Shown: positions 10,857-30,356 of the stretch, piece by piece
How positions within the stretch are numbered: the stretch's first letter is position 1
How the letters are laid out: each line of letters begins with the position of its first letter
DNA from: Octopus bimaculoides
Lineage: Eukaryota
Assembly: GCF_001194135.2 (NCBI RefSeq)
Contig: NC_069003.1
Coordinates: 32,438,105 to 32,502,104, forward strand
Reading direction: 5' to 3'
Length of the DNA: 64,000 nt
The notes under the pieces: model-generated
Told to the model about the DNA's origin: nothing
Databases searched by the model: none
Seen by the model: only the letters and a program-made list of their open reading frames with translations
Program-made: the position numbers and the translations under genes

Positions 10857-11048
10857 TACAAATGGGTGCACTAGGTTATACTCTTTCTACCCCCATTTAT
10901 CCCACTTACCAAAAACAATTAATAATAGACAAATAGAAAGGTAAAACTTAACTATCCAGTAAATAGTGGTAAATAGAATAAGCACTAGGCTCACCATTTT
11001 CAATTATAATCCTTGAAGAGAGTGACTCAACATGTCCAGTGGTGGATG

Positions 11049-11378
11049 TAGCTTGGCATTGGTTAATTTTTTTTTCAAAGATTTGTGTTGCCTTTTGCAT
11101 TTAAGGACTTTGTATGTATTGATGATATTGTTCATTTTCGGGTCTGTGGTGAGTAAGGGGAGGTTTTGTTTGATTGTGGTGTATGCTTCGATGTTTTTGG
11201 GGTTGTGGGTGGAGATGTATGGAAGTATTTTGGGGTTGGGTGTGTTATTGTGTTGGTTGGTTTTTAGTGTGTTTTTGTCAAGTTCCTTGGCACGTTTTAT
11301 TCCAAGATCTATGAGTGTGGAGGGATATTGGCGTTGTAATAGTGTTTTTTTGAGGTCTTGTAAGCGTATTTCTCGAGT
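11049..11378 (-). mobile_element. Penelope-like element ORF fragment (RT thumb / linker upstream of GIY-YIG)
   Basis: Manual translation gives ~110 stop-free codons, TREIRLQDLKKTLLQRQYPSTLIDLGIKRAKELDK...ILPYISTHNPKN...LLTTDPKMNNII...VLKCKRQHKSLKKKLTNAKL. This fits the PLE pattern L..RGYP..LI..GI.KA...LPF.STYNP...SKRQP.NLK..LT.AK. Confidence 0.8.
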
Positions 11379-11390
11379 ATATATATATGT

Positions 11391-11537
11391 AACAGGCTTC
11401 TTTCAGTTTCCGTCTACCAAATCCACTCACAAGGCTCTGGCTGGCCCAAGGCTATAGTAGATGACGCTTGTCCTAAGTACCACACAGTGGGACTGAACCC
11501 TGAACTATGTGGTTGGGAAGCAAGCTTCTTACCACAT
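11391..11537 (-). mobile_element. 5' half of SINE family A
   Basis: CTTTCAGTTTCCGTCTACCAAATCCACTCACAAGGC...GGGACTGAACCC...CTTACCACA matches family A. Confidence 0.85.
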
Positions 11538-11632
11538 ATTTAATAAATTTGCAATATATATGCACACACTTACACAATGTGTGTATGTGTATATGTATGT
11601 AGGTCTATATATATGTTATATGCATCATATAA

Positions 11633-11675
<43 letters not shown>

Positions 11676-12245
11676 NNNNNNNNNNNNNNNNNNNNNNNNN
11701 NNNNNNNNNNNNNNNNNNNNNNNNNNNNNNNNNNNNNNNNNNNNNNNNNNNNNNNNNNNNNNNNNNNNNNNNNNNNNNNNNNNNNNNNNNNNNNNNNNNN
11801 NNNNNNNNNNNNNNNNNNNNNNNNNNNNNNNNNNNNNNNNNNNNNNNNNNNNNNNNNNNNNNNNNNNNNNNNNNNNNNNNNNNNNNNNNNNNNNNNNNNN
11901 NNNNNNNNNNNNNNNNNNNNNNNNNNNNNNNNNNNNNNNNNNNNNNNNNNNNNNNNNNNNNNNNNNNNNNNNNNNNNNNNNNNNNNNNNNNNNNNNNNNN
12001 NNNNNNNNNNNNNNNNNNNNNNNNNNNNNNNNNNNNNNNNNNNNNNNNNNNNNNNNNNNNNNNNNNNNNNNNNNNNNNNNNNNNNNNNNNNNNNNNNNNN
12101 NNNNNNNNNNNNNNNNNNNNNNNNNNNNNNNNNNNNNNNNNNNNNNNNNNNNNNNNNNNNNNNNNNNNNNNNNNNNNNNNNNNNNNNNNNNNNNNNNNNN
12201 NNNNNNNNNNNNNNNNNNNNNNNNNNNNNNNNNNNNNNNNNNNNN

Positions 12246-12525
12246 AATATCAGTGAAGAATTTCACTGGAAAAGAAGATATAAGGTTTGCCAGGTTTTTG
12301 TCTCTCTCACCAAGGTCACCAGCTGTCGAACGCCGACGAAGGGAAATAACCCTGAAATCCGGATACGTTCGTGCTGCTGACCGAGGTGAGAGGGATAACT
12401 TCCCTTGGCAAACAGGACACAGTCGTGTGTCGATAAGCCAGCTGGAGGAGATGTCCTCCTGGGGCTAAAAGCAACAGTAACATCCACCCCTAGGGGTCAG
12501 CCACACTTAAGTGGCAATATACTAC

Positions 12526-12530
<5 letters not shown>
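12246..12530 (+). mobile_element. GC/CpG-rich, highly self-complementary hammerhead-bearing element (candidate retrozyme unit or PLE pLTR), 5' end lost in gap
   Basis: Composition contrasts with flanks; nested inverted complementarity over 12285-12413 plus several further hairpins; ends at a TA microsatellite. Confidence 0.7.
12327..12371 (+). ncRNA. Type I hammerhead ribozyme motif (palindromic stem III, U4C core variant)
   Basis: CGAACG (stem I) - CCGACGA (core; consensus CUGANGA) - AGGG AAATAA CCCT (stem II) - GAAA - TCCGGA - TA (NUH = AUA, predicted cut after 12365) - CGTTCG (stem I complement). Confidence 0.85.
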
Positions 12531-12568
<38 letters not shown>

Positions 12569-18350: not shown

Positions 18351-19321
18351 CTCTGTTCTATTCTGAGGTGTTAATATCTTTACACTTATGCTGCGTATTA
18401 TCACTCGTACACATTGCAGAGGGGAGAGATGAATGAATTCTGAAGAACTGCAAAATAATAACAAAAGTTATAGGTTCAATTTTCATCCCCAAAAAGCTGC
18501 AAAAAAAAAAGAAAAAAAAAAATCCGTCTCAAGGGCCTCTTTTCACAGCAAGACTAAGTACATGTGGATGTGACTCTGTACATTTATTTATTTATTTTTT
18601 TTATTTATCAATAACTCGTGTTGAATCAGTACTTGTGTGTGTTTGTGTGTGTGTGTGTGTGTATGCATGCATGTGTGTATGTATATGTGTGTGTATATGT
18701 ATGTATGTATCTATCTATCTATCTATTTATCTCTCTCTCTCTCTCTCTCTCTCTCTNNNNNNNNNNNNNNNNNNNNNNNNNNNNNNNNNNNNNNNNNNNN
18801 NNNNNNNNNNNNNNNNNNNNNNNNNNNNNNNNNNNNNNNNNNNNNNNNNNNNNNNNNNNNNNNNNNNNNNNNNNNNNNNNNNNNNNNNNNNNNNNNNNNN
18901 NNNNNNNNNNNNNNNNNNNNNNNNNNNNNNNNNNNNNNNNNNNNNNNNNNNNNNNNNNNNNNNNNNNNNNNNNNNNNNNNNNNNNNNNNNNNNNNNNNNN
19001 NNNNNNNNNNNNNNNNNNNNNNNNNNNNNNNNNNNNNNNNNNNNNNNNNNNNNNNNNNNNNNNNNNNNNNNNNNNNNNNNNNNNNNNNNNNNNNNNNNNN
19101 NNNNNNNNNNNNNNNNNNNNNNNNNNNNNNNNNNNNNNNNNNNNNNNNNNNNNNNNNNNNNNNNNNNNNNNNNNNNNNNNNNNNNNNNNNNNNNNNNNNN
19201 NNNNNNNNNNNNNNNNNNNNNNNNNNNNNNNNNNNNNNNNNNNNNNNNNNNNNNNNNNNNNNNNNNNNNNNNNNNNNNNNNNNNNNNNNNNNNNNNNNNN
19301 NNNNNNNNNNNNNNNNNNNNN

Positions 19322-19563
19322 CGGATGGCAACACCAGGCTCCAGTCTAATTTGGCAGAGTTTCTACAGCTGGATGCCCTTCCTAACGCCAACCACTCAGA
19401 GAGTGTAGTGGGTGCTTTTACGTGTCACCCGCACGAAAACGGCCACGCTCGAAATGGTGTCTTTTATGTGCCACCCGCACAAGCCAGTCCAGGGGCACTG
19501 GCAACGATCTCGCTCGAAAATCCTACGGGAGCCAGTCAGGCGGTACTGGCAACGGCCACGCTC
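19322..19563 (-). mobile_element. Non-autonomous RTE-related element (family R) with internal hairpin modules
   Basis: CAGCTGGATGCCCTTCCTAACGCCAACCAC (reverse complement of the RTE-type GGAAGGGCATCCAGC motif) followed by GCCAGT..ACTGGC modules; nearly identical to 28931-29250. Confidence 0.85.
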
Positions 19564-19711
19564 AGGAAAATATCATTTCTTCCTTTACCCATCAGTTTCT
19601 CTGATTCCGTATGTCCCTTGGTAATGAGTTGATGAAGTTTGGTCTTTTTTAATGTTTTGCATTGCATGTCCAGTCAGTATTTTCATAAGGATTTATTGTG
19701 ACTGTTTGACC

Positions 19712-28930: not shown

Positions 28931-29250
28931 ATCATCATCATAATTGTTTAACGTCCGCTTTTGGACGATTTGACTGAGGACTGGTGAAACCGGATGGCTA
29001 CACCACGCTCCAATCTGATTTGACAGAGTTTCTACAGCTGGATGCCCTTCCTAACACCAACCACTCTGAGAGTGTAGTGGGTGCTTTTATGTGCCACTCG
29101 CACGAAGGCCAGTCAGGCGGTACTGGCAACGGCCACGCTCAAATGGTGTATTTTATGTGCCACCCGCACAAGAGCCAGTCCAGGGGCACTGGCAACGATC
29201 TCGCTCGAAAGTCCATTACATATGCCACAGGCACAAGTGCCAGAAAGGCG
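28931..29250 (-). mobile_element. Family R element with (GAT)n tail and ~2.5 tandem hairpin modules
   Basis: ATCATCATCAT...TTTAACGTCCGC tail, GATGCCCTTCCTAACACCAACCAC body, modules at ~29085-29150, ~29151-29215 and ~29216-29250. Confidence 0.88.
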
Positions 29251-29257
29251 ACAGGAC

Positions 29258-29425
29258 ACCAGTCTATTACAGGATTGCTCACTTTTTTACCAGATGAGTG
29301 GACTGGAACAATGTGAAATGAAGTGTTTTGCTCAAGAACACAACACACTGCCTGATGCATGAATTGAAACCACAATTTTATGATCATGAGTCCAATACCC
29401 CAACCTCTAAGCCATGCACTTCCCC
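29258..29425 (-). mobile_element. tRNA-headed SINE family T
   Basis: GTGTTTTGCTCAAGAACACAAC...GAATTGAAACCACAAT...CCTCTAAGCCATGCACTTCC, the reverse complement of the family T head. Confidence 0.7.
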
Positions 29426-30027
29426 ATCAAGTTCTGTGGTCAATATGATTGAATAACTTCTTGCCCCCAAATTTGTGACTTTGTGTTTTTGTGAGCAACA
29501 ATTATTATTTAAATCCTACTGAGGTCAGCTTCCTCATTGACCCTGCCAGAAATTTTGATAAAATAAGTAGGTATCAGCCAAGTATTGTGAGGATGGGGCT
29601 ACAGGATCACTGGGTCCTGTCCCTCCTCCACCTCTAAAACTTAGTGTGAGACACTGTTGTTATGTAGCCTAGATTAACTCTGATCAAGATGGATTGATGA
29701 TGAAAATGCGCTCCAGTCTGGACTGTTCTGTCTTTTATGAAGTTCCTAAAACTACACCCTCTGTTTATTTTTCATCTTTTACTTGTTTCGTTTATTGGAC
29801 TGCAGCTATCTTGGAGCACTGACAGGAGGGCTTTAGTTGAACAGATTGACCTCAGTTTTTTTTTTAAAGCCTGGTGCTTATTCTATCAGTTTCTTTTGCC
29901 AAGCTGCTAAGTCACAGGGATGGTTGTCACACACATACACGTACACACACAATAGGCTTCCTTCAGTTTCTTATTTCATTATTGCCCACAAGGGGCTACA
30001 CACAGAGAGGACAAACAAGGACAGACA

Positions 30028-30203
30028 AAGGGATTAAGTCGATTACATCGACCCCAGTGCGTAACTGGTACTTAATTTATCGACCTGAAAAGGATGAAAG
30101 CAAAGTCAACCTCGGCCGAACTTGAACTCAGAACGTAAAGACAGGCGAAATACCGCTAAGCATTTCGCCCGGCGTGCTAACATTTCTGCCAGCTCGCCAC
30201 CTT
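30028..30203 (-). mobile_element. Young full-length SINE family M
   Basis: CpG-rich; minus strand reads GGTGGCGAGCTGGCAGAAATGTTAGCACGCCGGGCG...GACTTTGCTTTCATCCTTTTCAGGTCGATAAATTAAGTACCAG. The central motif recalls conserved SINE-superfamily bodies (Meta/Deu type; assignment not verified). Confidence 0.88.
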
Positions 30204-30356
30204 TCTGGCATGCTTGAGGACTGCTATTTCTTGCATGTCAAATGAAAACCTGTGTACAGGTTTCATTAGGAGGTAAAGAGAGTAAAGATCAAAAAGGAAG
30301 TATTTTTGCAAGTAAAAATGTTTATTACAAATAAATGTCACTCTTGTGTAGCATAC

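What the first reader, a model, noticed from the sequence alone, without database searches (positions are those of the whole stretch)
12327..12371. Type I hammerhead ribozyme with palindromic stem III and a U4C core variant
Seen: every element of the type I topology is in register. Stem I is a perfect 6 bp (CGAACG/CGTTCG), the core is CCGACGA, stem II is 4 bp with an AAAUAA loop, followed by GAAA, the 8-nt palindrome ATCCGGAT and an AUA cleavage triplet. Established: minimal type I hammerheads with short palindromic stem III occur in Penelope-like pLTRs and metazoan non-LTR retrozymes, and are proposed to cleave as dimers; U4 is normally conserved. Inference: either an attenuated copy or a family-wide variant core. 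It lies antisense to the host gene's intron.
Basis: partly seen in the sequence, partly recalled or inferred. Interest (0 to 1): 0.9.

Follow-up and report, generated by a model that had tools for sequence, protein, structure and literature searches.

The report
Hammerhead-type motif in a retrozyme-like insert
The sequence really has the full layout of an animal type I hammerhead ribozyme, of the kind carried by retrozymes and Penelope-like retroelements, but one essential core base is changed, so it is most likely a weakened or dead copy of an ordinary mobile-element ribozyme.

Summary
This is more than chance for one window. A relaxed descriptor finds it once in the window and never in 60 Mb of random sequence. 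A covariance model built only from four published retrozyme hammerheads ranks it first (17.4 bits, E about 0.01), the same score range as hammerheads next to intact Penelope-like element (PLE) genes.

Loop 1 has the layout of the axolotl retrozyme hammerheads. The motif caps a 129-nt rod in a strongly structured segment. That segment is CpG-rich and sits between (TA)n runs. A PLE gene fragment lies 0.9 kb away. The predicted homodimer is the classical double hammerhead.

Against activity, U4 is C, and published mutagenesis reports low activity for single mutants across the CUGA turn that contains U4. Pair 10.1-11.1 is A-U. Only one copy is visible. Rfam reports no hammerhead.

I found no homologue, so I could not test whether C4 is private or family-wide, nor look for covariation. 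The intron claim is also untested. Verdict: a new, probably attenuated copy of a known kind, of modest interest.

The parts
12327..12332 (+). Helix I, 5' strand (positions 2.6-2.1), CGAACG
   Evidence: Pairs perfectly with 12366-12371. All pairs are standard in the covariance-model alignment.
12333..12339 (+). Core box CCGACGA (C3 C4 G5 A6 C7 G8 A9). Position 4 (12334) is C instead of the consensus U.
   Evidence: Consensus CUGANGA as used in PMC7229834 supplementary legend S1.
12340..12353 (+). Helix II, AGGG/CCCU (4 bp; pair 10.1-11.1 is A-U), with the 6-nt loop 2 AAAUAA
12354..12356 (+). Core G12 A13 A14
12357..12364 (+). Helix III, 8-nt palindrome AUCCGGAU (A15.1...U16.1). In a monomer it gives at most 2 bp plus a CCGG loop. 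In a homodimer it gives 8 intermolecular pairs.
   Evidence: RNAcofold dimer MFE. Equivalent palindromes ACGCGCGU, ACACGUGU, ACAUGU and ACAGUACUGU occur in published retrozyme hammerheads, and ACCGGU in PLE loci.
12365..12365 (+). A17; predicted cleavage between 12365 and 12366
   Evidence: Register of the motif. Inferred, not assayed.
12366..12371 (+). Helix I, 3' strand (1.1-1.6), CGUUCG
12285..12413 (+). Extended rod. After helix I comes internal loop 1 (UGU opposite U), then the upper helix CAGC/GCUG, then further helices out to GUUUGCCAGG/CCUUGGCAAAC. The hammerhead motif sits at the tip.
   Evidence: 111 nt, -53.8 kcal/mol, z -7.65; 282 nt, -116.8 kcal/mol, z -7.84.
12246..12529 (+). Visible part of the inserted element: unique in the window, 49% G+C, CpG o/e 0.59. 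Its 5' end is lost in the gap.
11676..12245 (.). Assembly gap (570 N) that hides the 5' part of the element and could hide a second, tandem copy
11627..11675 (.). (TA)n run on the left of the gap
12530..12556 (.). (TA)n run directly after the element's 3' end
10947..11441 (-). Decayed fragment of a Penelope-like element ORF (RT-to-GIY-YIG linker), on the opposite strand, 0.9 kb from the motif
   Evidence: phmmer gave 420 hits. Long hits carry RVT_1 plus GIY-YIG. The best tblastn hit is 59% identical, E 1.5e-28.

Best explanation
The 45-mer is a genuine hammerhead-lineage sequence. It is the ribozyme module of a non-autonomous retrozyme-like element, or the 3' (pLTR) part of a 5'-truncated Penelope-like element, inserted into a (TA)n microsatellite.

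In such elements the type I hammerhead cannot close helix III by itself. Two copies, in tandem in one transcript or on two transcripts, pair through the palindrome to form a double hammerhead. Each active site then cuts after position 17. This releases unit-length RNA with 5'-OH and 2',3'-cyclic phosphate ends, which can be circularised and reverse-transcribed by a PLE enzyme. That mechanism is established for relatives and only inferred here.

This particular copy carries C at core position 4 and has no visible partner copy. As it stands it is most likely a weak or dead ribozyme. C4 also strengthens a competing fold in which C3-C4-G5 pairs with the CGG of the palindrome.

Shown here: the architecture, the non-random structure, the insertion context and the predicted dimer. 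Inferred: transcription, cleavage and circularisation.
For: (1) Exact register of all elements.

(2) A covariance model built only from four published, experimentally used retrozyme hammerheads makes this the top hit of the window: 17.4 bits, E about 0.009, all 13 pairs standard, next hit 12.8 bits. The same model scores hammerheads lying 103 nt and 716 nt downstream of intact PLE ORFs at 27.1 and 17.2 bits.

- Helix I of 6 bp is followed by an internal loop of 3 nt (5' strand) opposite a single U, then an upper helix CAGC/GCUG. The axolotl retrozyme Ax353 has the same layout: CACAGC-UUC-ACCUCA / UGGGGU-U-GCUGUG.
- Positions 15.2 and 16.2 are Y and R, as in the GAAAY/RUH rule.
- Loop 2 is 6 nt and A-rich.

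(4) The dimer MFE is the double hammerhead with an 8-bp intermolecular helix III: -32.5 against 2 x -13.8 kcal/mol.

(5) The whole visible segment is unusually structured, z -7.8.

(6) Context:
- (TA)n lies on both sides, and (TA)n is a preferred target of the Naiad PLEs, with the same bias hypothesised for Neptune (PMC8557442).
- A PLE ORF fragment lies 0.9 kb away.
- A decayed tandem pair of hammerhead-like units lies elsewhere in the window.
- PLE relatives use a CCGG-centred palindrome (ACCGGU) in helix III.

(7) There are 7 CpG in 45 nt (o/e 2.2) in a window with o/e 0.27. This argues for a recent insertion that has had little time to decay.
Against: - U4 is C. In pairwise mutagenesis of a tertiary-stabilised hammerhead, all single mutants in the CUGA turn had low activity (PMC9901934).
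- Pair 10.1-11.1 is A-U, whereas G-C is reported as highly conserved (PMC4209133).
- Rfam gives no hammerhead hit at gathering score, nor at E up to 10 on 201 nt. Rfam also reported nothing at E up to 1 for L001 and L002, where my scan and model later found PLE-linked hammerheads.
- Only one copy is visible, so no cis dimer is shown.
- No homologue was found, so there is no covariation evidence at all.
- As a monomer the hammerhead fold is a tiny part of the ensemble, about 2e-6.
- The neighbouring PLE fragment is on the other strand, looks much older, and may be a coincidence.
Confidence: 0.68

Rival explanations
1. Same element, but C4 is the family consensus. A retrozyme or PLE lineage in this genome would use a CCGANGA core that still cleaves as a dimer in vivo. 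The C3-C4-G5 : CGG alternative pairing might then act as a lock that keeps monomeric or circular RNA uncut.
For: All 28 paired positions and the other core bases are intact, and the segment looks young, with 7 CpG in 45 nt. So few post-insertion mutations are expected. T-to-C creates a CpG, against the mutational drift of this CpG-poor genome. A natural U4C hammerhead that is weak in vitro but sufficient in vivo is on record for a viroid (PMC3088659). C4 adds 2.2 kcal/mol to the competing fold.
Against: One hit among about 39 constrained positions is what about 2.5% divergence would give by chance. Single mutants in the CUGA turn are poorly active (PMC9901934). No second copy could be examined.
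Confidence: 0.17
2. Chance resemblance. The real feature would be only a long hairpin or inverted repeat (foldback element, MITE end or hairpin-RNA locus), whose 33-nt loop happens to look like a one-mismatch hammerhead.
For: The motif needs one core mismatch to be allowed. My rough estimate is of order one such chance site per multi-Gb genome (plus the analytic estimate). Rfam's only hits on the hairpin are weak miRNA-like ones: mir-4529 at 19.5 bits against a gathering score of 88.
Against: There were 0 descriptor hits in 60 Mb of random sequence. An independent model gives E about 0.01. The loop 1 layout, the Y15.2/R16.2 rule, the 6-nt loop 2, the double-hammerhead dimer MFE, the (TA)n flanks and the PLE neighbourhood were not part of the selection and all fit. 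No target-site duplication or terminal-repeat structure of a DNA transposon is visible around the hairpin. Genomes with PLEs or retrozymes hold thousands of true copies (PMC4209133, PMC7229834), so mutated true copies should far outnumber chance sites.
Confidence: 0.1
3. C at 12334 is an assembly or sequencing error in a draft contig end, and the real sequence is a consensus CUGACGA hammerhead.
For: The motif lies 82 nt from a 570-N gap in a low-quality draft with 14 N runs in 64 kb.
Against: Nothing in the sequence itself suggests an error, and substitution errors are rare in consensus assemblies. This is not testable here.
Confidence: 0.05

Closest known systems
Type I hammerheads of metazoan non-LTR retrozymes (Cervera and de la Pena 2020, PMC7229834): coral Amil224, mussel Mg353, axolotl Ax353 and Ax330
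   Same: Helix I of 6 bp and helix II of 4 bp with a 5-6 nt loop. GAAAY/RUH. Helix III is a 6-10 nt palindrome (ACGCGCGU in mussel, ACACGUGU in axolotl, AUCCGGAU here). Loop 1 has 3 nt opposite one U, followed by an upper helix, as in both axolotl motifs. The surrounding RNA is highly structured. Dimer-dependent cleavage is expected.
   Different: C4 instead of U4, and an A-U pair at 10.1-11.1. No tandem array is visible: there is one copy next to an assembly gap. No sequence similarity exists outside the motif. Neither expression nor a circular RNA has been shown.
Hammerheads in the pseudo-LTRs of Penelope-like elements (Cervera and de la Pena 2014, PMC4209133; Craig et al. 2021, PMC8557442)
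   Same: Palindromic helix III, with CCGG-centred ACCGGU in PLE loci L002 and L004. The position is near the 3' end of an element. Insertion is into (TA)n. A PLE ORF fragment lies 0.9 kb away, in the inverted orientation often seen in PLE insertions.
   Different: The min-HHRs of metazoan PLEs, and those seen here in L001/L002/L004, usually have a shorter helix I and a helix II unlike the canonical 4 bp (7-8 bp in S. mansoni; 2-3 bp in L001/L002/L004), often with an extra base after A9. This motif has the canonical 6/4 layout. No PLE ORF is contiguous with it on the same strand, and the neighbouring fragment is old and shares no DNA similarity with the segment.
Natural U4C hammerhead variant of a viroid, cited in Perreault et al. 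2011 (PMC3088659)
   Same: The same core substitution. It is reported to lower activity strongly in vitro yet to be tolerated in vivo.
   Different: A plant RNA replicon, not an animal genomic element. I did not read the primary paper.
Rfam Hammerhead_1 (RF00163) and the intronic HH9/HH10 families
   Same: Type I topology.
   Different: No match at gathering score, nor at E up to 10. There is no evidence of orthologous conservation or of an intron.

Membership tests
Hammerhead ribozyme, type I | 5' core box C3-U4-G5-A6-N7-G8-A9 | tested here: not met
   The sequence is CCGACGA: 5 of the 6 specified bases match, and position 4 is C. Rare natural core variants, including U4C, are on record (PMC3088659). 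Mutants of the CUGA turn are poorly active (PMC9901934). I therefore call it a hammerhead-lineage motif, not a demonstrated ribozyme.
Hammerhead ribozyme, type I | 3' core G12-A13-A14, pair A15.1-U16.1, and H17 (not G) at the cleavage site | tested here: met
   GAA at 12354-12356, A15.1 at 12357, U16.1 at 12364, A17 at 12365.
Hammerhead ribozyme, type I | Three helices around the core in type I order, with helix I open and helices II and III closed or dimerising | tested here: met
   Helix I has 6 bp, helix II has 4 bp, and helix III is an 8-nt palindrome. The dimer MFE forms all three.
Hammerhead ribozyme, type I | Conserved G10.1-C11.1 pair at the base of helix II | tested here: not met
   The pair is A-U. 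It is still a pair. U-U occurs here in the axolotl Ax353 retrozyme hammerhead and in some bacterial examples.
Hammerhead ribozyme, type I | Covariation in helices I and II among homologues | not testable with these tools
   No homologue was retrievable. Peptide search found none, exact-ORF look-ups found none, and pattern scans of the metagenome, prokaryote-genome and viral collections found none. No eukaryotic genome database was available.
Hammerhead ribozyme, type I | Site-specific self-cleavage | not testable with these tools
   This needs a transcription and cleavage assay.
Hammerhead ribozyme, type I | Match to the curated Rfam models | tested here: not met
   No hammerhead family was reported. 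Control: Rfam, run at E up to 1 on L001 and L002, also reported nothing for the hammerheads found there next to PLE genes.
Metazoan non-LTR retrozyme | Canonical type I hammerhead with weak or palindromic helix III | tested here: met
Metazoan non-LTR retrozyme | Tandem repeats of about 170-400 bp, each with one hammerhead | tested here: inconclusive
   One copy is visible. 285 nt without internal repetition abuts a 570-N gap that could hold another unit. Solo monomers are also described (bioRxiv 10.64898/2026.07.22.740005).
Metazoan non-LTR retrozyme | Expression as small circular RNA | not testable with these tools
   No RNA data were available.
Penelope-like element (pLTR hammerhead) | Hammerhead lies downstream of an RT plus GIY-YIG ORF on the same strand, within a repeated pLTR | tested here: not met
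   tblastn with 266 PLE proteins finds only the minus-strand fragment at 10947-11441 and nothing on the plus strand near the motif. The upstream 570 nt are unknown.
Penelope-like element (pLTR hammerhead) | Insertion into a microsatellite target such as (TA)n | tested here: met
   (TA)n lies at 11627-11675 and at 12530-12556. The target preference is described in PMC8557442.

The most novel reading that the evidence does not exclude
C4 is not a private lesion but the consensus of a retrozyme/PLE hammerhead lineage in this, probably cephalopod, genome. That would be an animal hammerhead family working with a CCGANGA core. The extra C3-C4-G5 : CGG pairing with its own helix III palindrome would act as a built-in switch between an uncut monomer and a cleaving dimer.
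Probability: 0.15. Interest if true: 0.55.

Novelty: new member of a known kind. Interest (0 to 1): 0.3.

Why it matters
If it is a decayed or attenuated copy, it simply adds one more hammerhead-bearing retroelement relic to an invertebrate genome. It also shows that such copies escape Rfam annotation.

If C4 proved to be family-wide and active, it would relax what is treated as an invariant base of the hammerhead core in an animal lineage. It would also offer a natural example of a core base doubling as part of a conformational lock. Either way, the locus is not evidence for a host-gene regulatory ribozyme.

Tried and rejected
- **Rfam.** Run at gathering score on the whole window, and at E up to 10 on 201 nt. 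No hammerhead was reported, only weak chance-level hits (mir-4529 at 19.5 against 88 bits).
- **Second copy in the window.** Looked for by pattern with 3 mismatches and by word-7 blastn. None found. The 16-nt match at 11489 (D17) lies in a SINE-like repeat and is not a hammerhead.
- **Family copies through protein space.** The open frame across the motif gave no candidate. Exact look-ups of the two minus-strand ORFs gave nothing on record.
- **DNA pattern scans** of metagenome contigs, prokaryote genomes and viral contigs gave 0 hits. These collections are not expected to hold this genome.
- **The PLE fragment** gave no word-index hit but 420 hits in the full HMMER search. Loci of related PLE proteins (L001-L004) share no DNA similarity with the segment, so they served only as yardsticks.
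- **L003**, the locus of the closest PLE protein, shows no recognisable hammerhead in its short flanks.
- **Pfam scan of all window ORFs** to find host exons. I prepared it but did not run it. None of the ORFs looked by eye like a conserved exon, so the intron claim stays untested.
- **DNA-transposon or foldback reading.** Considered and set aside because no terminal repeats or target duplication are visible.

Full report
**1. The observation**

Window 12327-12371 (+) reads CGAACG CCGACGA AGGG AAATAA CCCT GAA ATCCGGAT A CGTTCG. In hammerhead numbering:

| Element | Window position | Sequence |
|---|---|---|
| Helix I, 5' strand (2.6-2.1) | 12327-12332 | CGAACG |
| Core box C3-A9 | 12333-12339 | CCGACGA (C4 at 12334) |
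| Helix II and loop 2 | 12340-12353 | AGGG AAAUAA CCCU |
| G12 A13 A14 | 12354-12356 | GAA |
| Helix III, palindrome (A15.1-U16.1) | 12357-12364 | AUCCGGAU |
| A17 | 12365 | A |
| Helix I, 3' strand (1.1-1.6) | 12366-12371 | CGUUCG |

Two points depart from the usual consensus.

**2. Is it more than chance?**

I wrote a descriptor that allows one core mismatch. It requires helix I of at least 5-6 bp, helix II of at least 3-4 bp with a 3-10 nt loop, GAA(A), an even palindrome from A15.1 to U16.1, and a non-G at position 17.
- It finds this site and nothing else on both strands of the window.
- It finds no site in 30 Mb of first-order Markov sequence with the window's composition, and none in 30 Mb of uniform sequence.
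- My rough analytic estimate is 1e-10 to 1e-9 per position. That is negligible for one window but about one chance site in a genome of several Gb. The motif alone is therefore not proof.

**3. An independent model**

The supplementary Table 2 of Cervera and de la Pena 2020 (PMC7229834) prints four retrozyme constructs with marked cleavage sites. I cut out their hammerheads (coral Amil224, mussel Mg353, axolotl Ax353 and Ax330), aligned them and built a covariance model with the three helices.
- Searched over the window without filters, the candidate is the best hit: 17.4 bits, E about 0.009 (the calibration is rough), full length, all 13 pairs standard. The next hit scores 12.8 bits.
- As a yardstick, the same model scores hammerheads lying 103 nt and 716 nt downstream of intact RT plus GIY-YIG ORFs at 27.1 bits (L002) and 17.2 bits (L004). 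The three short-helix hammerheads of L001 score below 10 bits.
- Rfam reports no hammerhead for the candidate at gathering score, nor at E up to 10 on 201 nt. Rfam, run at E up to 1 on L001 and L002, also reported nothing for the hammerheads found there. Its silence is therefore weak evidence.

**4. Features that were not used to pick the site**

- *Loop 1.* After the 6-bp helix I there is an internal loop of 3 nt (UGU) on the 5' strand opposite a single U, then an upper helix CAGC/GCUG. The axolotl retrozyme Ax353 has CACAGC-UUC-ACCUCA ... UGGGGU-U-GCUGUG, and Ax330 has the same 3+1 layout.
- *Positions 15.2 and 16.2.* They are U and A, which fits the GAAAY/RUH rule quoted in that supplement.
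- *Helix III.* It is an 8-nt palindrome, as in mussel (ACGCGCGU) and axolotl (ACACGUGU). PLE loci L002 and L004 use ACCGGU, which shares the CCGG centre.
- *The rod.* The helix I extension continues into a rod of about 129 nt (12285-12413). The whole visible 282 nt fold at -116.8 kcal/mol, z -7.84, with several further perfect small hairpins. Retrozyme RNAs are described as highly structured.
- *The dimer.* RNAcofold of two copies gives, as the minimum free-energy structure, the classical double hammerhead. Helix III forms 8 intermolecular pairs, helix II stays intact, and helix I forms in trans. The energy is -32.5 against 2 x -13.8 kcal/mol for the 45-mers, and -111.3 against 2 x -53.2 for the 101-mers.

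**5. Context**

- *The genome.* The window is a eukaryotic draft: 35% G+C, CpG o/e 0.27, 14 runs of N, and many TA/CT/CA microsatellites. From memory, the SINE-like repeats look cephalopod. I did not test this.
- *The segment.* The motif lies in a unique segment, 12246-12529, that is 49% G+C. The 45-mer alone holds 7 CpG, o/e 2.2. In such a CpG-poor genome this suggests a young insertion.
- *The flanks.* The segment ends directly at a (TA)n run (12530-12556). On its left is a 570-N gap preceded by another (TA)n run (11627-11675). (TA)n is a preferred insertion target of the Naiad PLEs, and the same bias has been hypothesised for Neptune (PMC8557442).
- *A PLE fragment.* At 10947-11441 on the minus strand lies a decayed fragment of a PLE protein. 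It gives 420 HMMER hits. The long hits carry RVT_1 and GIY-YIG, with the match falling in the linker between them. The best tblastn hit is 59% identical, E 1.5e-28. PLE insertions often include an inverted 5'-truncated copy. However, this fragment looks old and shares no DNA with the segment, so the neighbourhood is only mildly supportive.
- *A decayed tandem pair.* The model's second and fourth hits, 56720-56677 and 56171-56128 (both minus), lie 549 nt apart in register within a decayed tandem duplication. The alignment score is 117 against 40 +/- 7 for shuffles. The hammerhead-like block is the best-kept part, 70% against 59% identity. This reads as an old retrozyme-like dimer and shows that such elements have lived in this genome.

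**6. What speaks against an active ribozyme**

- U4 belongs to the CUGA turn. In comprehensive single and double mutagenesis of a tertiary-stabilised hammerhead, all mutants in this turn except the C3-G8 swap had low activity (PMC9901934).
- A natural U4C variant is recorded as much weaker in vitro, though sufficient in vivo for a viroid (PMC3088659).
- As a monomer the hammerhead fold is marginal: -6.0 against -13.8 kcal/mol, about 2e-6 of the ensemble.
- The preferred monomer fold pairs C3-C4-G5 with the CGG of the palindrome. C4 makes this competitor 2.2 kcal/mol more stable than U4 would.
- Only one copy is visible, so a cis dimer is not shown. The gap could hide one.

**7. What could not be done**

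No collection of eukaryotic genomes was available.
- I tried to reach other copies through called ORFs and through exact pattern scans of three collections. All were empty.
- The claim that the site is antisense to a host intron could not be checked either. I saw no convincing exon in the ORF lists, but I did not run a systematic search.

**8. Verdict**

The site is best explained as a hammerhead-lineage module of a retrozyme-like or PLE-derived element inserted into a TA microsatellite. It has canonical metazoan type I architecture and carries a core substitution that probably attenuates or kills it (confidence about 0.68).

| Reading | Confidence |
|---|---|
| C4 is a family-wide, functional variant | about 0.17 |
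| Pure chance inside an unrelated hairpin | about 0.10 |
| Base-call error at 12334 | about 0.05 |

Because the strict core consensus is not met and cleavage is untested, I do not call it a demonstrated ribozyme. It is a new, probably crippled member of a well-known kind, and of modest interest.

Noticed in passing
window 55780-56900 (-): Decayed tandem duplication with a unit of about 549 nt. Each unit holds a degenerate type I hammerhead-like block: 56720-56677, AUUUCG CUGAUUA AGUG AGAAUAA CACC GAAACAUAUU UGUAGU; and 56171-56128, GCUUUG UUGAUAA GGUC ACAAUAA AACU GAAACAUGAC UGAAGU. It looks like an ancient retrozyme-like dimer.
   Followed up: partly
window 10947-11441 (-): Frameshifted fragment of a Penelope-like element protein (the region between RT and the GIY-YIG endonuclease). 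It is cut at its 5' side by a SINE-like repeat at about 11385-11540.
   Followed up: yes
L001 6597 (-), 7104 (+), 8961 (+): Three copies of a short PLE hammerhead (ACU CUGAAGA A GGC GAAA GCC GAA AGCGCU C AGU) lie downstream of an intact PLE ORF. One is inverted, which is the complex tandem/inverted layout described for PLEs.
   Followed up: partly
proteins P0153, P0164, P0168, P0210, P0212, P0223, P0232: Full-length animal-type PLE proteins (RT plus GIY-YIG) are deposited under bacterial names (Candidatus Thiodiazotropha and Solemya velum gill symbiont genomes). This is most likely host DNA carried into symbiont genome bins.
   Followed up: no
window, whole: Strong CpG depletion (o/e 0.27) at 35% G+C, with many copies of one SINE-like repeat whose translations recur as ...CPRCHAVGLN.E.CGWEANFLPH... 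in ORF lists on both strands. A few 280-nt stretches are CpG-dense, for example around 19321-19700 and 28941-30300.
   Followed up: no
window 36411 (-): The only exact CUGANGA...GAA site with a helix II in the window (CUGAGGA g cag acaugg uug GAA). It has no helix III palindrome or helix I and is probably chance.
   Followed up: partly
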